Origin: Octopus bimaculoides
Taxonomy: Eukaryota
Assembly (NCBI RefSeq): GCF_001194135.2
Contig: NC_068996.1
Location: 1,558,074-1,593,271 of the forward strand
Length of the DNA: 35,198 nt
Direction of reading: 5' to 3'
Of the stretch, positions 361 to 35,198 are shown in pieces. Numbering within the stretch: position 1 is the stretch's first letter; each line of letters opens with the position of its first letter. The position numbers and the translations under genes are program-made. The notes under the pieces are model-generated. The model was given only the letters and a program-made list of their open reading frames with translations, did no database searches and had not been told where the DNA came from.

Positions 361-1213
361 ATTAATGCAATAATAATAATGATAACAACAAAAACAACAG
401 CAACAAAGAGGACGACGATGATTATGATTGGCTAAAATGTTCAAACAATAATTACGTAATGATTCAACGATTAATTATGGCGAATAATTATTAAATTTAG
501 GCGTGTTTGTCTGGCACATATGTTGTAAGCAGCTTAGATATAAGAAAAATTTCAACTTTAATACCTTCATGCCTATTAGGTATAAAAAGTGTTGAAGCCT
601 CGAATCAGAATAAATTCTTCCACAAGTCAGTATTTACTCATTAAATAAGATATTCAACACAAATATAATATAATTCGAATTTTTCCATAAGTGTTCTTCC
701 TCAACTTCATTCCATGAGCGCTAGTTTATAGCATTTCACATATTTGTACGTGATACGATTCTGCCAAAGTTGCATGGAAAAATGCACTTCTCTACTTGAC
801 TACACGAGAAGCTACAGTTCCTCGTGTAGACAAGTAGTGAACTACAGCTACCGAAACATATTCTGACCACATAAGTGAAACAGAGATTATAAAATGAGGG
901 ACCTTGACATATCTGTCCTTATGATGCATCACAACTTTTTGTAAAGCATCTTATCCCACGAGGCACCGATGCAAGATGGGTCGAATAATAAAGAATCTCA
1001 TGAATTCCATTTTCTCTCTGACCTGTTTTATAAACTCTACGGACATGAATTCCTGAATTAAATCCAGTGCTATTTGCCCCCACACTGTTGATGACATGAG
1101 GTAACCAAATAACCAAACGAGCAGGCTTTTAGCGGCATATTACAAGGTGTTAATGTAAATTGTAAACTATTATATATATTTACATATATGAATACGCGTG
1201 CGCACCGATGGAA

Positions 1214-1395
1214 ACACACACACACACGCATACATACATATATATGCATTCATGTATACACAAGCATATATACATACATACACACATACATACATAAGTA
1301 CTTACGTAGATGCATACATACATACATACATAATACATACATACATACATACATAATACATACATAATACATACATACATACATACATACATACA

Positions 1396-1428
<33 letters not shown>

Positions 1429-1460
1429 GCATACATACATATGTATGGATATATATGTGT
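1214..1460. repeat. (CA)n/(TACA)n microsatellite
   Basis: Direct reading; source of the MYVC/IHTY-type ORFs. Confidence 0.95.
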
Positions 1461-1461
1461 G

Positions 1462-1795
1462 CCTGCTTTCCATTTTTGTTGTCGTTTCTTTTAATGTTGG
1501 CTGATTCTCAACCAATACGACAATGTCATCGGCAAAATCCAAGTGTTTCACTACGCACAGTCAAACATCTTTTTGAAGTCAATGAAGTTCATTATTAGTG
1601 GTCTTAGGTATTCCATGCATTATTCTACGATGCTGGGCAGTGTGAATATTCACTCGCAGGACGATCTGTTGGATTGACATCCGGCTTGTTTTGTCAGCTT
1701 TACATCTAGCACAACCTTCAACCGGAACACTGCTCAGCAACACTGAGCACAGCACTTTTCCCGGCTTTGACAATAGTCTTATTCGCCTCTAAGTA
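1462..1795 (-). mobile_element. RTE-clade LINE reverse transcriptase fragment, inverted relative to its 3' half, with an internal deletion
   Basis: Minus-strand translation gives RG-IRLLSKPGKVLCSVLL, then MNFIDFKKMFDC, then a jump to KHLDFADDIVVLVENQPTL (RT motifs up to the F/YADD box). Confidence 0.85.
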
Positions 1796-4625: not shown

Positions 4626-4975
4626 GGCGTAGCGTGGCCAAGTGGTAAGAAGCTTGCTTCCCATCCACATAGTTCTGGGATCAGTCCCACTGCGTGGCAC
4701 CTTGGGCAAGTGTTTTCTACAATAGCTTCGGGCCGACCAAAGCCTTCTGAGATGATTTGATAAACGGAAAGAATCCCGTGGTATTTAAAGGTATATATTT
4801 CTATCTGTGTGTGTATCTGTCCCTCCACCATCACTTGACAACCGATGTTGGTGTATTTATACCTCCATAACAGGTATACAAAGAATAAGTCCTGGGGTCA
4901 ATTTGTTCGACTATAGGCGAAGCTTCCGCATGCCGCACTCAAATTACTTAAACAAGTAAAATAATAAAATAAAAA
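4626..4975 (+). mobile_element. SINE family B (tRNA-type head, CORE-like CCTTGGGCAAGTG motif, internal microsatellite, A-rich tail)
   Basis: Aligns by eye with copies at 8580, 8817, 10592 and 24853. Confidence 0.85.
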
Positions 4976-6455: not shown

Positions 6456-6890
6456 ATTCATTTACATATGGATGAGAAACAAGAAATGAAGAAAATGAAG
6501 AAAAAAGGAAATATGAAGAAAAGAAAAAGAAGGAAAGGAGAAATTGACATACAGACTTCAGTTTATTCAAAGATATTGAAAACAATATATGAAATTCTTA
6601 TCCCTACAGCCGTTTCCATATCCAATTGATTCAATTAGAGAAATTAAATTAAATCAAAAATTTTCATATTGGTTAACTGGTTAATTGGGTATTTCATCAG
6701 GGGAGAATTTCTAGGAAGGAGTTACATTCCAACGTATTTTTCGACCCTTGATAGACTCAAATGTGTGCGTTTTGGTAAGGTATGCATTAACAAAAAAACA
6801 TCGTAAGTATATACACACATATAAACAAATGTGTGCGTGTGTATTTGTAATCCATAATAGTTGTAGTTAGGGTGAAGTAGATATTATATA

Positions 6891-7314
6891 TATATATAAA
6901 AGAGACCACTAAGTGGACTGCTAATGTGCTAGAAGAAGATCACCGAATAGCTCTCAAAGAAAAAAAATAGCGAAGCAAAAACATACAGGCGAGACTAGTG
7001 AAAATTATAGAAATAAATACAAAGTTATCCGTAGACCAGGTTTCGAAATCAATACTTTCTTACCGAAAATATCTGTTTCTCTTCAGTACGGACTGCCAAA
7101 GAAATATAATTCCCAGAATCATGTACTAGTTGTTCCCAACGAGTAAAGAAAGTATTGATTTCGAAATCTGGTCTACGGATAACTTTGTATTTATTTCTGT
7201 AATTTTCACTAGTCTCGCCCGTATGTGTTTGCTTCGCTAATTTTTTTTCTTTGAGAGCTATTCGGTGATCTTCTACCACATCAGCAGTCCAATTAGTGGT
7301 CTCTTTTATATATA
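6891..7314. mobile_element. Head-to-head inverted insertion (arms 6891-7063 and 7143-7314, 79-bp spacer) carrying a hammerhead; probable Penelope-like/retrozyme terminal repeat
   Basis: Arms of about 173 bp, roughly 93% identical by eye, both ending in (TA)n; hammerhead spans the spacer and left arm. Confidence 0.8.
7027..7093 (-). ncRNA. Type-I hammerhead ribozyme, canonical core, GUC cleavage triplet
   Basis: Minus strand: stem I GTCCGTA (7093-7087)/TACGGAT (7033-7027); core CTGAAGA (7086-7080); stem II GAAA-CA-GATATTTTC-[GGTAA]-GAAAGTATT-GA-TTTC; GAAA (7044-7041); helix III ACCTGGT; C17 at 7034. Confidence 0.85.
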
Positions 7315-7380
7315 CATATATAATAATCCATTTGAGATCTCAGGTAATTTTTTTCTAAATCTCCTGATTCTTTTAATTAT

Positions 7381-7959: not shown

Positions 7960-8273
7960 TTCCTCTTTTCGCCCTTTCAAAGCCTAGCCAGGCACATGGG
8001 CCCGGTTTCCCGGTTTCTATGGCTTATGCCCCCCCCCCACAGCTGGACGGGACACCAGTCCATCGCAGCGTTACTCAAGAGACAGGAAGAAAGAGTGAGA
8101 GAAAGTTGGGGCCAAAGTGTACAACAGGGGTCACCACCACCCCCTGCCGGAGCCTCGTGGAGCTTTAGGCGTTTTCGCTCAATAAACATACACAACGCCT
8201 GGTCTGGAAATCGAAACCACGATCCTCCGACTGCGAGTCCGCTGCCCTAACCACTGGGCCATTGCGCCTCCAC
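7960..8273 (-). mobile_element. SINE family E (tRNA-derived head), apparently full length
   Basis: Minus strand: A box TGGCCCAGTGG, B box GGTTTCGATTTCC, and a 3' GCTGCGATGGACTGGTGTCCCGTCCAG..AGAAACCGG motif seen in several metazoan SINE superfamilies. Confidence 0.8.
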
Positions 8274-8296
8274 ATAGATGCTGGTATGATAAGAAA

Positions 8297-8579
8297 NNNN
8301 NNNNNNNNNNNNNNNNNNNNNNNNNNNNNNNNNNNNNNNNNNNNNNNNNNNNNNNNNNNNNNNNNNNNNNNNNNNNNNNNNNNNNNNNNNNNNNNNNNNN
8401 NNNNNNNNNNNNNNNNNNNNNNNNNNNNNNNNNNNNNNNNNNNNNNNNNNNNNNNNNNNNNNNNNNNNNNNNNNNNNNNNNNNNNNNNNNNNNNNNNNNN
8501 NNNNNNNNNNNNNNNNNNNNNNNNNNNNNNNNNNNNNNNNNNNNNNNNNNNNNNNNNNNNNNNNNNNNNNNNNNNNNNN
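8297..8579. other. Assembly gap (further gaps at 9544-9754, 12741-12950, 14213-14262, 24187-24547)
   Basis: N runs; the last four are bordered by TA-rich microsatellite. Confidence 1.
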
Positions 8580-8743
8580 ACGACGGGGTTCTTTCAGTTT
8601 CCATTTACCCAATCCACTGACAAGACTTTGGTCGGCCCAAGGCCATAGTAGAAGACACTTGCCCAAGGTGCCACACAGTGGGACTGAACCTGGAACCATA
8701 TTGTTGGTAAGCAAGCTACTTACAACACAACCATGCCTGCACC
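8580..8743 (-). mobile_element. SINE family B, 5' half (remainder lost in the gap)
   Basis: Reverse complement matches the head of the 8817 and 24853 copies. Confidence 0.85.
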
Positions 8744-8816
8744 TAATTAATTTCTAATAATAATATATCCGATGGCATACATATACATATATCTATGTGT
8801 GTGGGGGTTGCTGATG

Positions 8817-9214
8817 GTGTGTATGGCTGTGTCGTAAGAAGCTTGCCTCCCAACCACATGGTTTCGGGTTCAATCCCACTGTGTTGCACCTTAGGCAAGT
8901 GTTTTCTACTATAGCCTCGGGCCGACCAAAGCCTTGTGAGTGGATTTAGTAGACGGAAACTGAAAGAAGCCCGTCGTATATATATATGTATGCATATATA
9001 TATATGTATGTATGCATTTGTTATTTGTCTGTGTTTGTCTCTCCACCATCACTTGACAACCGATGTTGGTGTGTTTACATCTCCGTCACTTAGCGGTTCG
9101 GCAAAATAAGTAGTATGCTTACAAAGAATAAGTTCTAGGGTCGATCTGTTCGAATAAAGGCGGTTCTCCAGTATGGCCGCAGTCAAATGACTGAAACAAG
9201 TAAAAGAATAAAAG
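8817..9214 (+). mobile_element. SINE family B, full length
   Basis: ggctgtgtcgtaagaagcttg..ggttcaatcccactg..accttaggcaagtg..gacggaaactgaaagaagcccgtcg-(TA)n-..gtcaaatgactgaaacaagtaaaagaataaaag. Confidence 0.9.
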
Positions 9215-9221
9215 ATTATAC

Positions 9222-10030
<809 letters not shown>

Positions 10031-10591
10031 AGCTAGCTGTTGAAACGACTGTCTAGAGCTACTCTTTGTTCATTTCACCATGCCTACCTGTCAAATTTCA
10101 ACGTCTACAATTAGAGAAAATGTTGTCTCTGCGTACAATATCCAGATATGAAATAGTTCAAAGTGAGATGTACGTAGCATTTGTTTCCATTTTTGATTAA
10201 TATATTGTAGGTACATACAATGTTTGTCCTAAAATAATACATACAGTGTTTGTCTTAAAATAATTCTTAATTCAGTAGAGATTCTATTGTTACAGTTACT
10301 GATTTCTTATTAGTTAAACAATGCTAGCTGGTATTGTATAAGATATGGATACAGTGGCCAAGCCTGTGTGCAGAGAATTTCTTGATTAGTGCCATATTAT
10401 TTACACACAAAAATTCTCATTGTCATTAATTTTATTATAAGCTATAACAGGGTTGCTTTTTTTTTTTTTAACTACGTGAATAATTCCCCATTTGGAATAC
10501 AGTATTGGAATCAGTCGCTCTTATATTACTAAGGTGATTCTTAAAACAATTATCAATATTTCGCTTAGGCATATTATAGTAGTATGCTTAA

Positions 10592-10770
10592 GGAGCAGGC
10601 GTGGCTGTGTGGGAAGAAGCTTGCCTCCTAATCACATGGTTAAGAGCTGTGTGACAGGTAGGGTAAGTGTCTTTTATTATATACCCTCGGACTGGCCAAT
10701 GCCTTCTGAGTGGATTTGGTGGATGGAAAGAAGCCTGAAAGAAGCCCATCGTATGTGTGCGTGTGTGTGT
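10592..10770 (+). mobile_element. SINE family B, 5' half, diverged
   Basis: ggagcaggcgtggctgtgtgggaagaagcttg..gagtggatttggtggatggaaa..gaaagaagcccatcgtatgtg. Confidence 0.8.
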
Positions 10771-12740: not shown

Positions 12741-12971
12741 NNNNNNNNNNNNNNNNNNNNNNNNNNNNNNNNNNNNNNNNNNNNNNNNNNNNNNNNNNNN
12801 NNNNNNNNNNNNNNNNNNNNNNNNNNNNNNNNNNNNNNNNNNNNNNNNNNNNNNNNNNNNNNNNNNNNNNNNNNNNNNNNNNNNNNNNNNNNNNNNNNNN
12901 NNNNNNNNNNNNNNNNNNNNNNNNNNNNNNNNNNNNNNNNNNNNNNNNNNGTTTCTGTGTGTGTGTGCGTG

Positions 12972-14212: not shown

Positions 14213-14328
14213 NNNNNNNNNNNNNNNNNNNNNNNNNNNNNNNNNNNNNNNNNNNNNNNNNNATATATACATGTGTGTGTGTGTGTGTGTGTGTTTGCGT
14301 GTGTGTGTGTGTGTGTGTGTGCGTTTCT

Positions 14329-16865: not shown

Positions 16866-17166
16866 ATTCAGTAGTTTTATTTTTATAACGTGCTTTCACT
16901 TCACTACCGAGCGCAGCTCTGTGCGCCTTGGGTATGTGCTGTGGTTTGCTGTGGTGCTCTTATGTTTACTGTATTGAAAGTGTTTTGCGTAGAATGTGTG
17001 AAGTACCCAGTAGTGCAATTTTCTGTATGTTATATATATTTGTAAGTCCTGGTGTTTTTGTTATGTATTTGTCTGAATATTTTTTTATTATACCTAAGGC
17101 ACCTACTATGATAGGAATTGTTTCTGTTTTTAGATTCCACATTCGAGTTATCTCTATTTCCAGGTC

Positions 17167-17169
<3 letters not shown>
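16866..17169 (-). mobile_element. R4/Dong-clade LINE, 5'-truncated 3' end (restriction-like endonuclease C-terminus + 3' UTR + (AAT)n tail)
   Basis: KDLEIEITRMWNLKTETIPIIVGALGIIKK..IQKIALLGTSHILRKTLSIQ*; 3' UTR stem GGCGCA/TGCGCT; (TAA)n tracts on both sides. Confidence 0.88.
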
Positions 17170-17216
<47 letters not shown>

Positions 17217-17421
17217 GGCGGCGAGCTGGCAGAATCGTTGGCGTGACAGGCAAAAACATTTACCGGATTTTCGTCCGTCCTTACGTTCTGAGTTCGAAAG
17301 ACCGCCGAGGTCGACTTTGTCATTCCTGACTTGAAAAAATAAGCACCAGTTATGCAGTGGGGTCGATGTAATCGACTTACCCCTCCACCAAATATCAGGC
17401 CTTGTGTCTATAGTAGAAAGG
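17217..17421 (+). mobile_element. SINE family A
   Basis: GGCGGCGAGCTGGCAGAATCGTT..GAGTTCGAAAG..GGGGTCGATGTAATCGACTT..GTAGAAAGGATT. Confidence 0.88.
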
Positions 17422-17699: not shown

Positions 17700-19690
17700 C
17701 GTTCGTTCTAACGGAATGAACGCTTTTGTTTACTCAAAAGTCTTTTGCCTTTGATTTTGTCTCCAAATGTTGTTTATTGATTATTTTGTTACAAAACGGT
17801 TGTCGAAACCACCACCTTGCATACGTTACGGCTGGTCTTGCCGTTTGTGCCCCTTTAGGAGCTCAAATCCGAAGAGAAACTATTCTTTTGTTTCGAAAAA
17901 AATTAATTCCATAAACAAACATGGCGAAGACAGTGTTGCTGAAATACATGAAAGAGGAAGTAAGAGGTAGCTCTGATAGAGAGGAGCAAGACGCGGTAGT
18001 GCCCTTTTTTTTATACACAAATAAGAGGGAAGGCGAGGACCCACAAAGCTCAGCAGACCAAATTACCTCTAAAACAACGAACAGCAGCAGCAGAAGATCC
18101 AGTGACATCACAGCACAAAGAATTAATTTAAATTACTTAGTTGAAATCCTCGCGATAAATTGGACTATATTAAAGTCATCAATCAGCACTAGAAACAACA
18201 GGTCAACGAACACGTTTGCAATTTACTCTGCCAACGAATAACATTAGGAAAGCAGAAAAAAAAACAAAAGCAACTTCAATCATTCTATTGTGAATAACAA
18301 CGATAAGAACAGCAAAAACAAAAATACATTCGCAGCTACAGCTTCGAAAAGCACAGAGCTATTTAAGATGGACATCCTCCGGAACGACATTTTTCTAGTT
18401 GGAGCAAGTAAATTGATAAGGCTGAACACAGCCATCCACAACACCCTCCTGAGTTGTTGGCAGAAGCCCCCCCCCCAAAAAAAAAAGACTGTTATATATA
18501 TAGGTGTTTCTTAGCACAAAGCGGCCGGAGACGTCTAGTCAGGTAGATGTGAAAGGTGTACTGAAAGACATAATGCCCGATATTCGACATGTCTTCAGGG
18601 CGAAACAGTTTGCGGGGTTTTCGGTGCTCTTCAAGTCTGAAGCTCTGGCCGCCAACTCAGTGGTTCCCTGTCGGAGCGACATATATATATATATATATAT
18701 ATATATAAGTACCCCACCCATCGTATTGAAGGAGGAAAATTGTGTGCATACAGATCGCAGAAATTCCACGTTGGAGGTAAATTTATAGTGAATAGTTTTG
18801 GAAAGGAAACGGGACCGTCGCGAAAATTGGTCTGGGATTATTCTGGTGATGCTACTATACATTAAACCAGACGCGAACTATAAGATCTCAGACTTCATTC
18901 ACCTTCGAGGAAGGGACGAGCTACACTACAGTTGAGCGTATGTAGCGAGACAGGCCACAAGAACATTTTCTGTTCCCTACAGAAGACAAGGAGTCACGGA
19001 AGCCTCTTATTGCCCACACCGGGTTCGAAAAACCTCAATAATCAGACCAGCAACGAACATCAAAAAGCAGCTTCAGCACCGGAAACAATGGCATCATCAA
19101 TAACAGGTACAGCAAAGTCAGTAAACGTCGCAAGATCACCAACATCAACAACACTAACAAGACCAACAACACCAACAACACTAACAACACGAACAACAGA
19201 TGTACCACCACCACACCCTTGCACAGCCAAATAATAATAAAATTGACACACACAACATCCAGGGCTTTCCCAATGAAGCTCTCCCACTCACTCTCTCCGT
19301 TTACTCCAAACCCAAATACTTTCATAGACACACTCTGATTCCACAGACACAGATTCGTCTGAAACACGCAGTTAACATGAGGGAGAAGCTAGAAACAAAT
19401 TAACAGAAAACAAAAAAACGAAAAGAAATCACAATAAAACATCATGTTCCACATCAATACAAGTACCTAAAAACAATAACTCGCTCATAGCAGCCATAGA
19501 AACACCACTGGCATCACCAATTTCTACATCACCGCCATCACAGCCAGGTCTTCCAACATGACCACCACTGCAACAACCCATGTAAACTCTCAACAACAAT
19601 AACAATCCACACAAACACAAAATGTCGTAGTAGTGAGAAAGACCAACAAACAATTGATGGCCCTCGTAGCATGAAGGCCAGGCTGTTAGC
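17700..19690 (+). mobile_element. Probable 5' UTR and decayed ORF1 of an L1/Tx1-like LINE
   Basis: AAACATGGCG start at 17921; degenerate zinc knuckle (L)SVCSETGHKNIFC at 18932-18973; Thr/Pro/Ser-rich tail; runs directly into Tx1-type RT; interrupted by microsatellites and stops. The 5' boundary and assignment of 17921-18500 are uncertain. Confidence 0.6.
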
Positions 19691-20425
19691 CAAGAGGCTG
19701 GCATTTGTCGTCGATAAGCTGGCATTTTTCGCGCAAATACATGCTATCCCCAATAGGTATCTCGACAACAATCTTCCCCTCACTATATAGGAAGGGTAAG
19801 GGAGGAATCCGGCATGGATGGACCATCGTTCGTATGGTCCATCAATGATACCCACTCTCTTCCCCTCTGCATGTGCTAGCTCGGGAACTATTACTAAGGA
19901 AGTTACATCTTTCAAGGAGCATCCCGCGTGATCTAGTATGCGGAAGGTTCGTATCGGCTTATATAGTAATAGTGTCGAACAGCTCGGAAATCGAAGTGAT
20001 CGGCATTGACTTAAGGGTGTACGAAGCAGTGACAGAAGCAAAGATTAATCATTACAACTCGGTGGGCCTGCAGCACGGTACCTGGAGAGGCAGGTCAATG
20101 CCAACCGAGCGCGTCGTAAGGCGCTTGACGGAAGGACCGGTTAAATTGCTCGGGGTCTGGTTTGGTCCGGATCTCCAAGCGGACAAGAACTGATGGGAGG
20201 TGTCGAGCAGGGTGGTCAGTCTCACCCAGAAATGAGTAGAAAGGAATCTATGCCTGAAGGATCGGGTAGTGAAGGGAATGCGTACATGACTTCCGTCATC
20301 TATTACCGCCTGACCGTTGTCCCCTGCCCTGCTTCGTGGTTGATTAAGCTGGATCGCTGGCTCTACCATTTTCTGTGAAAAAGGCGAGTTCCATTCATCA
20401 GACGCTCCATCTGATGTCAACAGCA
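19690..20425 (+). mobile_element. L1/Tx1-like ORF2 fragment 1 (RT and thumb), pseudogenised; endonuclease missing
   Basis: AQIHAIPNRYLDNNL..LLLRKL..VSAY(ADD lost)IVIVS..YEAVTEAKIN..SVGLQHGTWRG..GPVKLLGVWFGPDLQ..YYRLTVVPCP..FL*KRRVPFIRRSI. Confidence 0.9.
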
Positions 20426-20444
20426 TATGGACAGCAAATGGTTG

Positions 20445-21770
20445 TTTGCTCTAAAAAGGGTAATTAGAGTATAATCAGTTAGGTTTAGTAAGGTATTAGT
20501 GATGGAAAGAAATAAAATAAAAGAGAGCTTAGAAACTTAGAAGAGGCGTTACAGAAAGGAATTGCAACCGACATGCTGGCCACGGGATTGGCTCTGGAAC
20601 AATTCTTCAACGCTAAACACGATGATTGCATTGTCAGAGCCATGTTGCGTGTTTTAAGAAACGAGGTAACTAAAGCCGCTCGGTGGGCCCGAGTGGCATA
20701 GGCTCAACGTGACAGCAAATCCTTTATTCAGTCTTTGGTTGAACGAAATTGGGGACACGGTGCCCGAGCCCAAGGAGATGTGTTCGACATTTCAGCAGCA
20801 CTTCACCCAATTGTTTGAGATGAATGGCAGTCCAGAACGCAGCACGGACTTCAATGCTTAATTCGATAGCATGCCACGACTTTCGGCAAGCGAGTGAAGT
20901 GTTGCTAAATGCCAATAACAGCTACGGAAATACGGGATACGATTATGGGTTTAACGGGGGTGGAGGAATCAGCTGGTTTGAATGGTCTGGTTTATGAGCT
21001 TTACTTTTATATGCCAGACTTGTTTGATTGCCTTTTAACAGATATCTGCCACAACTGGCAACAGAACGGGAGAATTCCCAATTCTGTAAGTTGAAAAGAA
21101 GTGGGACTGCTGAAAAAGGACCCAAACAAAGGAGATCAAGTAGAAACATTTTAGCCCATAACACTGCTGATCACAGACATCAAAATTTTGGACAAGGTGC
21201 TCGAAAAACTTTGGCGCTTCTAGTTGAAGAACTCAATGGTGATGCACAAACGTGATCCATCCCAAGCAGATCCATCCACAGCAACCTCCACTGCATACGA
21301 TACATCATAGACAAGATGGGTAACCAAGCTGGCATGGGCTCTGATAATTTTGGATCAGTGTAAATACATCACCAATACTTCACGGCTGTTCTCACGGTGG
21401 CCGGTCTTGGGCCTGTTTTCGGTGGCTGGATCGCTGCAGTGTACGACATATGCACGGTAGTTCGGGTGAATGGTTATCTATCGGAATCATTCAGTATCAT
21501 GCTGTCCTTTCTCGTCACTACTGCGGAGATTGGAGGCGTTGAGAGGCATCCCACACGAACTAGAATGTGGGAGAACTGTATTGGCATCTGCAGACAACTT
21601 CACAGTCAAAGTGTCGAATGGTAGACACATAGACCTAGTTGGTCCTGTTCTAAAAGAATAACAGGCGTTGACAGAAGCAAAAATTAACCAAGAAATGACT
21701 GTGGGCCTGCAGCTCTGCTCATAGAGATGTAGGTTCTTACCATACCACTTCGTGTCATCGGGCGTTCACA
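20445..21770 (+). mobile_element. L1/Tx1-like ORF2 fragment 2 (post-endonuclease linker to RT domain 7), pseudogenised
   Basis: KWLFALKRVIR..PITATEIRD..SAGLNGLVYELY..WQQNGRIP..PITLLITDIKIL..SIPSRSIHSNLH..GLGPVFGGWIAAVY..VRVNGYLSESF..LASADNFTV..EAKINQE. Confidence 0.9.
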
Positions 21771-22800
21771 GTCCTCTGTCAGTCAGGCACTGACAGAGGC
21801 GGGGGTATTGTTTTCATTGGTGATGGTTTGTTTGTCTGTGGACAAGATATCCCAAGAACCGCTGGATGGATTCAAATGAAATTTTCAGGGAAGTTTGCCC
21901 TCGTGACTGGCACGAACACAGTAGATTTTGCGATCGACCCAGTATAGGACAAGGATTCTGGATTATTTGTTATATTTACTTTACATGAAGTATTACAATC
22001 TTACGTTGACTTTCAAGTCTTTCTCTGATTATCTTATGATTTCCATGTAAGTTACGGTGGCGTTGCTGTTTCCAAAGTTTTATTATCGATTCTCCTTTAT
22101 TAATTTTACTCGCATCTCTGTCTTAGTAGAAACTGACAGATATAGAAATCAAACTACAAAATCAAACGGCAGTATTACCTTTCAGAAATTAAATAACACT
22201 AACATATTGAGTAACAATAATAAATTTAATTTATCCTCGACAATTTTTAGTTTTACCAATTTTGAATATATTGCTCCTGTTTAAAACTTCTTGCCTATTT
22301 CACAATTACATTTCTAGCTCTGCCTTGAAGGATGCTTTACTTCTTGGACTCACGTTTTTGTGCGCAACAATGTTGTTAAACCTCCATTAACAGCACTGTA
22401 AGCAGGTGCTTTCCGTTTTCTTTCACGCACAGATAAATATCTAGCTACAGACCTTAGTAGTCGTAAAGACACTATATCAGTGGATAGCCTAAAAAAGGCC
22501 TACATGGAGAAAACTTCCCTGTTCCCACTGCAGACGAGACACACAACATTACAAACTCGGTCCGTACACATGACTATCTATGGGATCGATCAGGTACCGA
22601 ACATGGATTCTAGATTATTTTTCGGTTTTTGTTTTTTAAATAAATTTTGAGAGCGATCGGGTTCATTTTTAGTATACTCGTTTGTGAGAGCAGTCGAGTT
22701 TATTTCAGATATTCTCATTTTAAAAATCACCTCCGGCTAATCGTTAGGAGGACGCTGGTTTTGCCTTGGCAGAGATTTGCGCTCTCTGAGTGCTCTTGTT
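21771..22800 (+). mobile_element. Helentron-associated non-autonomous element (HINE/DINE-1-like) with about 600 bp of extra internal DNA
   Basis: 5' hairpin CCTCTGTCAGT/ACTGACAGAGG, GTTT repeat, body homologous to 31281-31663, 3' CCTTGGCAGAGA, stem-loop GCGCTC-TCT-GAGTGC (22779-22793), T-rich end. Confidence 0.7.
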
Positions 22801-23696: not shown

Positions 23697-24565
23697 TTAT
23701 AAATATATGATAATCATAAGTATATATATACACATAGGATATTTATATATTTAGGAGTGTGAGCACATGTATATGCACAAACAGCACATGGGCACGTAAA
23801 CACACAGACACACGTACGCATATTCACGCAGACGGAATCTTAAAGATGATAAATTCATTGGAATATGATCGGGTTACTTAAAATTTTGAACTTAAAGTAA
23901 GAAACGAATGTCAATAAGTTACATGCAATTTTGTCAGTCCGAAAATATACATATACATATATATAATAATATTAGGGACAAAATCCAAAATTACAGGTAA
24001 AAAACTCAATTAAAATCAATTTATAAAAAATTAAAATTAAATTGAGCCTTATAGATAAAGTATATATAAAATATATAGTTTTAGGGAAAATAACCAATTT
24101 TCAAGAACTCATCGATGAAAATCCACTATCACATATAGAAAAATTAATAATTAAAATTAATAATTAATAATTAATATATATACATANNNNNNNNNNNNNN
24201 NNNNNNNNNNNNNNNNNNNNNNNNNNNNNNNNNNNNNNNNNNNNNNNNNNNNNNNNNNNNNNNNNNNNNNNNNNNNNNNNNNNNNNNNNNNNNNNNNNNN
24301 NNNNNNNNNNNNNNNNNNNNNNNNNNNNNNNNNNNNNNNNNNNNNNNNNNNNNNNNNNNNNNNNNNNNNNNNNNNNNNNNNNNNNNNNNNNNNNNNNNNN
24401 NNNNNNNNNNNNNNNNNNNNNNNNNNNNNNNNNNNNNNNNNNNNNNNNNNNNNNNNNNNNNNNNNNNNNNNNNNNNNNNNNNNNNNNNNNNNNNNNNNNN
24501 NNNNNNNNNNNNNNNNNNNNNNNNNNNNNNNNNNNNNNNNNNNNNNNGTATATACAATTGCAGCA

Positions 24566-24852: not shown

Positions 24853-25260
24853 ACTCTTACTCTTTACTCTTATACTTGTTTCAGTCATTTGACTACGGTC
24901 ATGCTGTAGCACCGCCTTTAGTCGAGAAAATTGACCCCAGAACTTATTCTTTGTAAGCCTAGTACTTATTCTATCGGTCTCTTTTTGCCGAACCGCTAAG
25001 TTACGGGGACGTAAACACACCAGCATCGGCTGTCAAACAATGGTGGGGGGAAAAACACAGACACATAAACACACACACATATATATATACATATATACGA
25101 CGGGCTTCTTTCAGTTTCTGTCTACCAAATCCACAGACAAGGCTTTGGTCGGCCCAAGGCTATAGTAGAAGACACTTGCCCAAGGTGCCACGCAGTGGGA
25201 CTGACACCAGAACCATGTGGTTGGTAAGCAAGCTACTTACCACACAGCAACTCCTGCGCC
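24853..25260 (-). mobile_element. SINE family B, full length
   Basis: Reverse complement begins GGCGCAGGAGTTGCTGTGTGGTAAGTAGCTTG and aligns with 8817-9214. Confidence 0.9.
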
Positions 25261-25583
25261 TATATATATATATATATATATATTTATGTATGCATGTATA
25301 TAATATATATATTATATACATATAAGCCTACATGCAAACGTATGTGTGAATATATTCTCTGGTTTATATCGTATAATAACCACTGGCTTGTCAGGAACAA
25401 TGTGAGGTTTGTCGTTTAGAGTTATATAGAGAACGAAGTCATCAAGCTCATATCATGATTGTCTTTTTATAACTGCGTAAACAATAAGCCATAGGTAGTT
25501 TCTCATTAACGATTGGGCTAGGAAAATACATACACTGCCGGGTTTATAGTTACAACTTGATGTTTGTATGTACGTATGCATGT

Positions 25584-32715: not shown

Positions 32716-33295
32716 AATAATGCTCAATGAAGCACAGTAGGATTATAAAATCTTTGATGAAAATATAAATTATCTCATGCCATTTACATGGATGATTTAA
32801 AGCTATTTGCAAAAAATGACCAACAACTACAGAACTTACTAGCGATTGTTAAACAATCCGGTGATGACATCAGGATGCAATTTGACCTCAGTAAATGTGC
32901 AAAAGCAAACTTTATCAGACGAAAAATCAGAGAAACACCCAACATTAAACTTGACCAGCATAATGTCATAAAGAGTTAGAACCAGCGAGAGCTACAGATA
33001 CCTAGGGGTATTTGAAGGTGATGGGACAAAATATTCACTGATGAGGTAAAGGATCAGAAGAGAATGTTATCGCAGGGTGAGAGCAATACTCACGGCAGAA
33101 CTGAGTGCAAGAAACAGGGTCAAAGTGATCAATACTTTAGCCATACCAGTCGTGACTTACAGTTTCAATATCTTTAACTGGTCAATTACTGAAATACGTA
33201 ATCTTGACAGAAAAATACGAAAATTGTTGACAAAATTCACCGCTCTAAGGCAAATGCAGAACGACTTAATCTTCCAAGAAAAGAGGCCCTATCGG
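32716..33295 (+). mobile_element. R4/Dong-clade LINE RT fragment (YMDD box to thumb), pseudogenised
   Basis: YMDDLKLFAKNDQQLQ (32785)..FDLSKCAK..YRYLGV..CYRRVRAILTAELSARNRVKVINTLAIPVVTYSF..LDRKIRKLLT. Confidence 0.9.
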
Positions 33296-33369: not shown

Positions 33370-34365
33370 CTGAGGACAATGCACCGTATGCATCACCCCA
33401 AAACAAACATAGACCGAATATACTATCTGAGTAAATAAAGCGGTCGTGTATTAATACAATCTTAATTCTTATAAAAAATTGCAACCATTTTCTGCCAATC
33501 TGCAAAACTCTAACATCTGTATGTCTAAAGCCAGTCCTAAAACGCGAAAATATATCCTGAAGAAACGTAGCTAGAAGAACTAATACCGAAACAAAATGTG
33601 TCCCCCAACTGATATAGCAAATCAAAATTTAAAATACATAGCCAAACTAATACCCAAACAAAATGCGTCCCCCAACTGATATAGCAAATCAAATTTTAAA
33701 ATATATAGCCAAACTAACCAGCTTCCAATATATTTAGGAGAAATTAGAAAAAAAACCCACATTGTAGTAAATACCTGAAAATCACCAGGTACCCTGACAT
33801 AGATGAAGCATGTATCCATCAATGGCTGATATAATCTTGTCTCAAATCAGAAAACGAGGGGTGTATCATTGCTGCACTGGGTCAGTCCCTTCCAACTGTT
33901 CTGAAAATTGAAAATCCAGAATCAATCGACGACATTGTCTCTGGATGGAGCCGTCTGACTCACAGAATACATGTTAAGATATGAAATGAGGGCATATCAG
34001 TACATGCACTGGGCAATATGCAGTACATGCAATCTCCAGCGAAGAGAGCACAAGTATCTGGACTGATCGGGAAATACAGGCTAACATATCTGATATCATT
34101 GCGAAAAATTATGTTTAAATGATTTGTCTTTGCATCGATGCTGCTGCCTCAACTGACAAAAACACATCTATGAAAGCGTTTGATACACCGAGCACACGTA
34201 AGGACTTAGACATACAATTTAGAAGAATCAAGAACATTACCTATTTTTATTGGAGCATTTGAAATGATATCAGAATGAGGAAACAAATATGCAGACCAAA
34301 TTCCAGGCAACACCAAAATAATAATTGCAAAATATCATACATAAGGGTGTTTCGCATATTTTAAT
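33370..34365 (+). mobile_element. Older R4/Dong-clade LINE C-terminal region (remnants of CCHC and restriction-like endonuclease)
   Basis: MHRMHHPKTNIDRIY..IHQWL..LKSENEGCIIAALGQSLPT..PESIDDIVSG..YMHWAIC..KDLDIQFRR..FIGAFEMI; heavily degraded. Confidence 0.65.
33578..33717. repeat. 67-bp tandem duplication inside the LINE remnant
   Basis: AACTAATACC(G/C)AAACAAAATG(T/C)GTCCCCCAACTGATATAGCAAATC.. repeated at period 67 with about 4 differences. Confidence 0.9.
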
Positions 34366-35001: not shown

Positions 35002-35198
35002 TAGTTTTATTTCTATAACGTGCTTTCACTTCACTACCGAGCGCAGCTCTGTGCGCCTTGGGTATGTGCTGTGGTTTGCTGTGGTGCTCTTATGTTTACT
35101 GTATTGAAAGTGTTTTGCGTAGGATGTGTGCAGTACCCAGTAGTGCAATTTTCTGTATGTTATATATATTTGTAAGTCCCGGTGTTTTTGTTATGTAT
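34996..35198 (-). mobile_element. R4/Dong-clade LINE 3' end (cut by the window edge) with (AAT)n tail at 34870-34995
   Basis: 4 substitutions in about 203 bp versus the corresponding part of the 16866 copy. Confidence 0.92.

What the first reader, a model, noticed from the sequence alone, without database searches (positions are those of the whole stretch)
6891..7314. Canonical hammerhead ribozyme hidden in a head-to-head inverted insertion
Seen: the minus strand of 7093-7027 folds into a complete type-I hammerhead: 7-bp stem I, intact CUGAAGA and GAAA cores, long stem II (4 bp + 2x2 internal loop + 9 bp + GGUAA loop), near-palindromic helix III ACCUGGU, and a GUC triplet with predicted cleavage between 7034 and 7033. 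The inverted partner (7143-7314, plus) begins in the stem II loop, so it holds only the 3' half (TTTC-GAAA-TCTG-GTC-TACGGAT). Established: type-I hammerheads with tiny palindromic helix III occur in Penelope-like element terminal repeats and retrozymes and often cleave as dimers. Inference: this is an unannotated ribozyme-bearing PLE/retrozyme family, and this copy may still self-cleave.
Basis: partly seen in the sequence, partly recalled or inferred. Interest (0 to 1): 0.85.

Follow-up and report, generated by a model that had tools for sequence, protein, structure and literature searches.

The report
Hammerhead motif in inverted retroelement relic
A 410-bp inverted-repeat insertion in an octopus-like genome carries one complete hammerhead ribozyme motif, and it looks like an old broken tail of a Penelope-like retrotransposon, which is a known and fairly ordinary kind of element.

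Summary
Minus strand 7093-7027 has every invariant hammerhead core base: CUGAAGA, GAAA, A15.1/U16.1 and C17. It also has a 7-bp helix I, a G10.1-C11.1 helix II extended to 4+9 bp, and a minimal quasi-palindromic helix III (ACCUGGU). My descriptor finds no other candidate in the window. Motifs this good arise about 1.3e-3 times per window in 500 Mb of simulated sequence, or about 70 per 2-Gb genome.

Two copies co-fold into the classic double hammerhead. Rfam gives only a sub-threshold hammerhead hit (16 bits).

The host element (6898-7307) is two inverted copies with their ends facing outwards, inside a (TA)n tract. The longer copy holds the whole motif on its sense strand, about 130 nt from its 3' end. 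This matches published Penelope-like element (PLE) insertion architecture.

It is not a tandem retrozyme. No RT or GIY-YIG ORF is present.

I found no other copy in any collection I could reach, so family conservation and covariation remain untested. A foldback MITE (a small non-coding DNA transposon with long inverted ends) carrying a chance motif is not excluded.

A transcript of the whole repeat would form a 164-bp hairpin that blocks the ribozyme fold (+45 kcal/mol). This copy is therefore probably a relic. Shared repeats place the window in an octopod.

The parts
6898..7145 (-). Longer copy of the element. Sense strand is inferred to be minus, with the 3' end at about 6898 facing outwards and the 5' truncation or junction at 7145. 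It contains the complete hammerhead motif.
   Evidence: Inverted-repeat boundaries. The unique 84 nt at 7062-7145 are contiguous with the left arm. Folded alone, helices I and II have pair probabilities of about 0.8-0.96 (the helix I pair next to the core 0.42).
7027..7093 (-). Type-I hammerhead motif. Helix I 5' strand 7093-7087; CUGAAGA 7086-7080; helix II hairpin 7079-7045; GAA 7044-7042; helix III ACCUGGU 7041-7035; C17 at 7034; predicted cleavage between 7034 and 7033; helix I 3' strand 7033-7027.
   Evidence: Direct reading; descriptor scan; MFE structure; sub-threshold Rfam alignment in the same register; double-hammerhead cofold.
7146..7307 (+). Shorter inverted copy. It starts inside the helix II loop, so it has only the 3' half of the motif (7146-7180: distal helix II 3' strand, UUUC, GAAA, UCUGGUC, UACGGAU).
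   Evidence: Arm alignment, 95% identity. The single difference inside the hammerhead half is C15.2 to U, which still pairs with G16.2.
7062..7145 (.). Unique centre between the arms. It carries the 5' half of the hammerhead (helix I 5' strand, CUGAAGA, helix II 5' strand).
   Evidence: No reverse-complement partner. No similarity elsewhere in the window.
6880..6897 (.). Left (TA)n-rich flank: target microsatellite. The target-site duplication cannot be resolved.
   Evidence: direct repeat D2 and inverted repeats I4-I12 are TA runs.
7308..7325 (.). Right (TA)n-rich flank.

Best explanation
The element at 6898-7307 is an old, non-coding, head-to-head pair of 5'-truncated copies of a hammerhead-bearing retroelement tail. 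It is most likely the 3' or pLTR (pseudo-LTR terminal repeat) part of a Penelope-like element, or of a non-autonomous derivative of one.

Inferred history: it inserted into a (TA)n microsatellite. Both cut target strands primed reverse transcription on element RNA, so the two copies have identical 3' ends facing outwards and different 5' truncation points that meet at 7145/7146.

Shown here: the longer minus-strand copy reaches far enough upstream to keep a whole type-I hammerhead. The shorter copy keeps only the 3' half.

Inferred function in the active parent element: the ribozyme would cut 3' of C17 (between 7034 and 7033). It would do so as a dimer whose two ACCUGGU segments pair to build a stable helix III, processing multimeric or read-through transcripts.

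Inferred state at this locus: the motif is probably a non-functional relic. The arms have diverged 5%, there is no partner copy on the same strand, and a transcript spanning both arms folds into a 164-bp hairpin that locks up the 3' half of the ribozyme. Such a hairpin would more likely feed small-RNA pathways.
For: 1. The motif is complete and in the correct order.
2. It is the only candidate in the window. Chance expectation is 1.3e-3 per window, and about 1.5e-5 for an 820-position element on both strands. None of 9 simulated matches had G10.1-C11.1.
3. Helices I and II are the MFE of the 67-mer, with z = -2.44.
4. RNAcofold of two copies gives the double hammerhead with an intermolecular helix III, -40.9 against 2 x -17.6 kcal/mol.
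6. The architecture matches published PLE features:
- an inverted 5'-truncated copy adjacent to the main copy;
- (TA)n preferred targets;
- hammerheads near the 3' ends (PMC8557442);
- hammerheads with a small palindromic helix III, a larger-than-usual helix II and a conserved G10.1-C11.1;
- paired motifs 100-700 bp apart on opposite strands (PMC4209133);
- a PLE protein that cleaves AT-rich DNA and extends both strands (PMC11167929).
7. The motif lies on the strand whose 3' end faces outwards, as a 5'-truncated retro-copy requires. This is a one-in-two check.
8. Repeats in the window match Octopus vulgaris chromosome DNA at 87-90%. PLEs of the Naiad clade are reported in Octopus species.
Against: - No second copy of the element was found, so family conservation and covariation are untested.
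- No RT or GIY-YIG ORF is nearby.
- No Rfam hammerhead model reaches its gathering score, and Hammerhead_1 does not appear even at E <= 10.
- Helix II, with a 35-nt hairpin, is much longer than in described metazoan type-I hammerheads.
- The unpaired base between A9 and G10.1 that is typical of PLE minimal hammerheads is absent.
- The one-sided 30-40-bp 'tail' often seen at PLE ends is not visible.
- Long terminal inverted repeats flanked by TA also fit a Tc1/mariner-type foldback MITE.
- The octopod PLE clade documented in the papers I read (Naiad) is said to lack canonical hammerheads.
- About 70 chance motifs of this quality are expected per 2-Gb genome.
Confidence: 0.6

Rival explanations
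1. The element is a foldback MITE, a non-autonomous DNA transposon with about 164-bp terminal inverted repeats and a TA target-site duplication. The hammerhead-like motif straddling one arm and the loop is then a coincidence with no ribozyme ancestry.
For: - The element is 410 bp, non-coding, has long near-perfect inverted ends and TA on both sides.
- It folds into one long hairpin (-277 kcal/mol).
- MITEs are far more common than PLE fragments (general knowledge).
- No Rfam hammerhead model reaches threshold.
- About 70 chance motifs per 2-Gb genome are expected.
Against: - The chance of a motif this good inside one 410-bp element is about 1.5e-5, and lower still with G10.1-C11.1.
- The motif also has a quasi-palindromic helix III that yields the double hammerhead on cofolding.
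- It sits on the strand expected for an outward-facing retro-copy.
- The TA 'duplication' is uninformative inside a TA microsatellite.
Confidence: 0.22
2. The element belongs to a family of inverted-repeat elements, of whatever transposition class, that genuinely carries a hammerhead captured from a PLE tail or a retrozyme. The fixed two-armed structure would be part of the family design rather than an accident of one insertion.
For: The motif evidence is the same as for the best explanation. The symmetric outer ends lack the one-sided tail described for PLE insertions.
Against: - No such family is described in the papers read.
- The hairpin would suppress the ribozyme fold by +45.5 kcal/mol, which makes a selected combination implausible.
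- No copies are available to test it.
Confidence: 0.1
3. The element is an active non-LTR retrozyme locus that is transcribed, self-cleaves and circularises.
For: It has a type-I hammerhead with a weak helix III, as in metazoan retrozymes (PMC7229834).
Against: - Retrozymes are tandem direct repeats of about 170-400 nt, each with a hammerhead.
- Here there is one complete motif, no direct repeat of the unit, and an inverted partner instead.
- The arms have decayed by 5%.
Confidence: 0.03

Closest known systems
Hammerhead ribozymes of Penelope-like elements, in pLTRs and truncated copies (Cervera & de la Pena 2014, PMC4209133)
   Same: Both are type I, with an intact CUGANGA / GAAA / UH core and a G10.1-C11.1 pair. 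Helix II is larger than canonical and helix III is tiny and palindromic, implying dimer-dependent cleavage. Motifs mostly occur in truncated non-coding copies, sometimes as two motifs 100-700 bp apart on opposite strands.
   Different: Here helix I is longer (7 bp against 4-5). Helix II is far longer (4+9 bp, a 35-nt hairpin, against 6-8 bp). There is no unpaired base between A9 and G10.1. The partner copy holds only half a motif. No link to an RT/GIY-YIG ORF has been shown.
PLE insertion architecture: inverted 5'-truncated copy, (TA)n target, 3' hammerhead (Craig et al. 2021, PMC8557442; PAc biochemistry, PMC11167929)
   Same: The element has head-to-head copies with identical outward ends, sits in a TA microsatellite, and carries the motif about 130 nt from the 3' end on the sense strand. 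Extension of both target strands by a PLE protein offers a mechanism for the inverted pair.
   Different: Both copies are very short (248 and 162 nt), with no ORF, no pLTR tandem and no one-sided 30-40-bp tail. The (TA)n bias and the Octopus records are described for Naiads, which are reported to lack canonical hammerheads.
Metazoan non-LTR retrozymes and amphibian or Schistosoma satellite hammerheads (PMC7229834)
   Same: Both have a type-I hammerhead with a 1-2-bp helix III and a small loop, active as dimers. Both are non-coding and AT-rich.
   Different: Retrozymes are tandem direct repeats expressed as circular RNAs, with a 4-bp helix II capped by a loop that contacts loop 1. This locus is an inverted pair with a single complete motif and an extended helix II.
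Foldback or long-TIR MITEs
   Same: Both are about 400 bp, non-coding, with long inverted arms and TA flanks, and both form a hairpin.
   Different: MITEs are not known to carry hammerheads. Here the motif spans the arm/centre boundary and is oriented as in a retro-copy.

Membership tests
Hammerhead ribozyme, type I | Invariant core C3 U4 G5 A6 N7 G8 A9, G12 A13 A14, A15.1-U16.1 and H17, in type-I order | tested here: met
   CUGAAGA, GAAA, U16.1 and C17 are all present in order on minus 7086-7034.
Hammerhead ribozyme, type I | Three helices around the core, with helix II closed by G10.1-C11.1 | tested here: met
   Helix I is 7 bp and helix II 4+9 bp in the MFE structure. Helix III is only 2 bp as a monomer, which costs +2.8 kcal/mol, but forms a 6-bp helix with a U.U mismatch between two copies.
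Hammerhead ribozyme, type I | Score at or above the gathering threshold of an Rfam hammerhead covariance model (an operational criterion) | tested here: not met
   No hit at gathering on the whole window and none at E <= 10 on 601 nt. On 81 nt, RAGATH-1-hammerhead scored 16.1 bits against 56.3, E = 0.87. Hammerhead_1, _3, _II, HH9 and HH10 were not listed.
Hammerhead ribozyme, type I | Core conservation and compensatory changes in the helices across homologous copies | not testable with these tools
   No second full copy exists in the window, in viral, metagenome or prokaryote collections, in the protein collections, or in the one 20-kb Octopus vulgaris locus. The two arms share only the 3' half, with one difference (C15.2 to U) that keeps pairing.
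Hammerhead ribozyme, type I | Site-specific self-cleavage 3' of position 17 | not testable with these tools
   This needs in vitro transcription or RNA-end mapping.
Penelope-like element (truncated copy or pLTR tail) | RT plus GIY-YIG ORF in the element or in full-length family members | tested here: inconclusive
   No such ORF is in or near the element, but 5'-truncated copies are not expected to have one. Full-length relatives could not be searched.
Penelope-like element (truncated copy or pLTR tail) | An adjacent inverted 5'-truncated copy forming inverted repeats | tested here: met
   Arms 6898-7061 and 7146-7307 are 95% identical, share the same outer ends and have unequal inner ends. The feature is described in PMC8557442.
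Penelope-like element (truncated copy or pLTR tail) | Hammerhead on the sense strand near the 3' end or in the pLTR | tested here: met
   The motif's 3' end at 7027 lies 129 nt from the outward end at 6898, on the same strand. That this end is a retro-copy 3' end is an inference.
Penelope-like element (truncated copy or pLTR tail) | Insertion bias for AT-rich or (TA)n microsatellite targets | tested here: met
   TA runs lie at 6880-6897 and 7308-7325. The bias is described.
Non-LTR retrozyme | Tandem direct repeats, each unit with a type-I hammerhead | tested here: not met
   There is no direct repeat of the unit and only one complete motif.
MITE (Tc1/mariner-type or foldback) | Terminal inverted repeats with a defined target-site duplication | tested here: inconclusive
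   Inverted ends are present, but TA on both sides cannot be told apart from the surrounding TA microsatellite.
MITE (Tc1/mariner-type or foldback) | Many copies of uniform structure whose ends match an autonomous DNA transposon | not testable with these tools
   No reachable collection holds the source genome.

The most novel reading that the evidence does not exclude
The motif is the working ribozyme of an undescribed octopod PLE lineage that targets (TA)n. That lineage could be Naiad-type, a clade reported to lack canonical hammerheads but to have some 'half-core' cases with core halves 35-50 nt apart. In that reading a 35-nt extended helix II with an internal loop replaces the usual short helix II and loop 2. 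This would be a new structural variant of the type-I hammerhead.
Probability: 0.1. Interest if true: 0.5.

Novelty: new member of a known kind. Interest (0 to 1): 0.25.

Why it matters
If confirmed, this adds one more hammerhead-bearing retroelement remnant, this time in a cephalopod-type genome, to the thousands already catalogued in metazoans. It is useful for repeat annotation, and as a possible example of a type-I hammerhead with an unusually long helix II. It does not open a new question by itself. The broader lesson is methodological: a complete hammerhead core inside a head-to-head insertion in a TA microsatellite is a good signature of a PLE-derived fragment, even where Rfam models are silent.

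Tried and rejected
- Rfam at gathering threshold on the whole window: nothing. At E <= 10 on 601 nt: only noise such as miRNA and sRNA models.
- Other copies in the window: blastn with word size 9 found only TA repeats. nhmmer with the long copy against the masked window and the Octopus vulgaris locus found nothing.
- Collection scans. The 3' half of the hammerhead in viral contigs gave 0 hits. A gapped pattern for the full hammerhead gave 0 in metagenome contigs and 0 in prokaryote genomes. An arm 20-mer gave 0 in metagenomes. An arm 21-mer in prokaryote genomes gave one hit, L001, which is a GC-rich bacterial coding sequence with no other similarity, so a chance match.
- Protein route to spurious ORFs across element copies: the 76-aa ORF gave no candidates. 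The 85-aa ORF against 1.84 billion representatives gave 0 hits.
- Sampling the same genome through repeat-encoded proteins. The LINE RT fragment hit only proteins 41-70% identical, from unrelated ENA assemblies; L002 has no shared SINE. The SINE-derived ORF gave a single Octopus vulgaris protein and one 20-kb locus, with no copy of the element.
- SINE or tRNA origin of the element: no tRNA-like gene found.
- Coding potential: Pfam found nothing for the element ORF.
- Supplementary sequence files of the two key PLE papers are not held. Lunse et al. is not held.
- Retrozyme reading: rejected for lack of tandem units.

Full report
**1. What is in the sequence**

The minus strand of 7093-7027 reads GUCCGUA CUGAAGA GAAACAGAUAUUUUCGGUAAGAAAGUAUUGAUUUC GAAA CCUGGUC UACGGAU.

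In hammerhead numbering:
- Helix I is 7 bp with an outer G.U pair (7093-7087 with 7033-7027).
- The core C3-A9 is CUGAAGA. Position 7 is the variable one.
- Helix II opens with G10.1(7079)-C11.1(7045). It runs 4 bp, a 2x2 internal loop, 9 bp and the loop GGUAA.
- G12 A13 A14 follow.
- Helix III is A15.1 and U16.1 around CCUGG.
- C17 is base 7034, and the scissile bond lies between 7034 and 7033.

RNAfold of the 67-mer returns helices I and II as the minimum-energy structure (-17.6 kcal/mol, z = -2.44, no shuffle as good).

**2. The host element**

The motif sits in a 410-bp element (about 6898-7307) made of two inverted arms, 6898-7061 and 7146-7307. The arms are 95% identical (8 substitutions, 2 indels) and enclose an 84-nt unique centre.

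The arm boundary falls in the helix II loop. The left arm plus the centre therefore carry the whole motif, and the right arm carries only the 3' half. The single difference in that half (C15.2 to U) still pairs with G16.2.

Both outer ends read ...GGUCUCUUUU and abut TA runs, so no target-site duplication can be defined.

**3. Is it more than chance?**

I wrote a type-I descriptor: helix I, CUGANGA, an optional bulge, a helix II hairpin of up to 70 nt, GAAA, up to 12 nt, UH, then helix I. At relaxed settings (helix I >=4 bp, helix II >=3 bp) it finds only this site on either strand of the 35-kb window.

In 500 Mb of first-order Markov sequence with the window's composition:
- Sites with helix I >=7 and helix II >=4 occurred 9 times.
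- That is 1.3e-3 per window, about 1.5e-5 per 410-bp element, and about 70 per 2-Gb genome.
- None of the 9 had G10.1-C11.1.

The motif is therefore unlikely to be chance at this place. Since a genome-wide scan would still meet a few dozen chance motifs, this alone is not proof.

**4. Rfam**

No family reaches its gathering score anywhere in the window. No hammerhead model appears at E <= 10 on 601 nt.

When only 81 nt are searched, the best match of all 4227 families is RAGATH-1-hammerhead. The score is only 16.1 bits against a threshold of 56.3 (E = 0.87).

In that alignment the 35-nt helix II and the minimal helix III are treated as a large insertion and a deletion. I infer that this is why the score is low. 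Operationally, the Rfam membership criterion is not met.

**5. Folding behaviour**

- As a monomer, a 2-bp helix III costs energy (-14.0 against -16.8 kcal/mol without it).
- Two copies co-fold into the classic double hammerhead. It has an intermolecular ACC.GGU/ACC.GGU helix III and swapped helix I strands (-40.9 against 2 x -17.6 kcal/mol). This is the behaviour described for newt, Schistosoma and PLE hammerheads.
- In the longer copy alone (7145 to 6898), helices I and II have pair probabilities of about 0.8-0.96, apart from 0.42 for the helix I pair next to the core.
- In a transcript of the whole element the arms form a hairpin of about 164 bp (-276.8 kcal/mol, z = -33). Helix I probability is then 0.00, and enforcing the hammerhead costs +45.5 kcal/mol.

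**6. What the element most likely is**

The published anatomy of Penelope-like element (PLE) insertions fits point by point:
- (TA)n is a preferred target.
- Hammerhead motifs lie near the 3' ends or in the pLTRs (pseudo-LTR terminal repeats) (PMC8557442).
- PLE hammerheads have a larger helix II, a conserved G10.1-C11.1 and a small palindromic helix III.
- Most occur in truncated copies, sometimes as two motifs 100-700 bp apart on opposite strands (PMC4209133).
- A purified PLE protein cleaves AT-rich DNA and extends both strands (PMC11167929). That gives a mechanism for two outward-facing copies.

Here the motif lies on the strand whose 3' end faces outwards, 129 nt from that end. I therefore read the element as a head-to-head pair of 5'-truncated tails of a hammerhead-bearing PLE or a non-autonomous PLE derivative. 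The link between animal retrozymes and pLTRs is argued in bioRxiv 10.64898/2026.07.22.740005.

**7. What does not fit or is untested**

- There is no RT or GIY-YIG ORF in or near the element.
- There is no one-sided tail and no tandem unit, so it is not a retrozyme.
- Helix II is much longer than in described animal hammerheads.
- The unpaired base before G10.1, typical of PLE minimal hammerheads, is missing.
- Long inverted ends flanked by TA equally describe a foldback MITE.

The decisive test is the structure and conservation of other genomic copies, and I could not run it. No relative was found in:
- the window itself;
- viral, metagenome or prokaryote contigs;
- the protein collections, queried with ORFs spanning the element.

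**8. Where the window comes from**

The window is a draft eukaryote assembly. It has five N gaps, many microsatellites and about 33% GC.

A tRNA-derived-looking repeat at about 7990-8276, together with another repeat family, matches an Octopus vulgaris chromosome (GCA_951406725.2, OX597820.1) at 87-90% identity. The window is therefore octopod.

PLEs of the Naiad clade are recorded in Octopus species and favour (TA)n. However, they are said to lack canonical hammerheads, apart from some cases with core halves 35-50 nt apart. In this motif the spacing between the core halves is 35 nt. This is a lead only.

**9. Verdict**

PLE-type is likely, retrozyme is not, the existence of a family is unproven, and self-cleavage of this copy is unlikely.
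- My estimates are about 0.6 for a PLE-type relic, 0.22 for a MITE with a chance motif, 0.1 for an inverted-repeat family that truly carries a hammerhead, and 0.03 for an active retrozyme.
- It is a new member of a known kind, of modest interest.

Noticed in passing
window 7990-8276 (-); also about 8580-9220, 24858-25266, 4634-4968 and 10591-10754: Interspersed repeats. One begins GGCGCAATGGCCCAGTGGTTAGGGCAGCGGACTCGC, which looks like a tRNA-derived SINE head. They match several places in a 20-kb Octopus vulgaris chromosome locus (L003) at 73-90% identity, so the window is from an octopod genome.
   Followed up: partly
window 32744-33295 (+): Frameshifted non-LTR retrotransposon RT fragment (YMDDLKLF motif). 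The Pfam RVT_1 hit is below the curated cut-off. The best database relatives are only 41-70% identical.
   Followed up: partly
window 1183-1560 (-): Short RT-like ORF piece (HLDFADDIVVL) that runs into a (CATA)n microsatellite. It is probably another LINE remnant.
   Followed up: no
window 16889-17326 and 35019-35198: Two copies of the same repeat: 60-aa antisense ORFs that differ by one residue. The sense strand encodes a conserved retroelement C-terminal peptide (IPIIVGALG...ALLGTSHILRK).
   Followed up: no
window 19400-21950: The GC-richest part of the window (0.43-0.46), with many overlapping frameshifted ORFs. Some resemble the N-terminal region of a LINE ORF2. Pfam found no hit.
   Followed up: partly
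window 8297-8579, 9544-9754, 12741-12950, 14213-14262, 24187-24547: Runs of N (assembly gaps), mostly next to microsatellites. The neighbourhood is a short-read draft, and repeat structures here may be collapsed.
   Followed up: no
window 33578-33717: A 67-bp unit repeated 2.1 times at 94% identity.
   Followed up: no
L001 2030-2050: A 21-mer of the element arm occurs in a Lachnospiraceae MAG contig, inside GC-rich bacterial coding sequence. About 0.3 such matches are expected by chance in that collection, so it is unrelated.
   Followed up: yes
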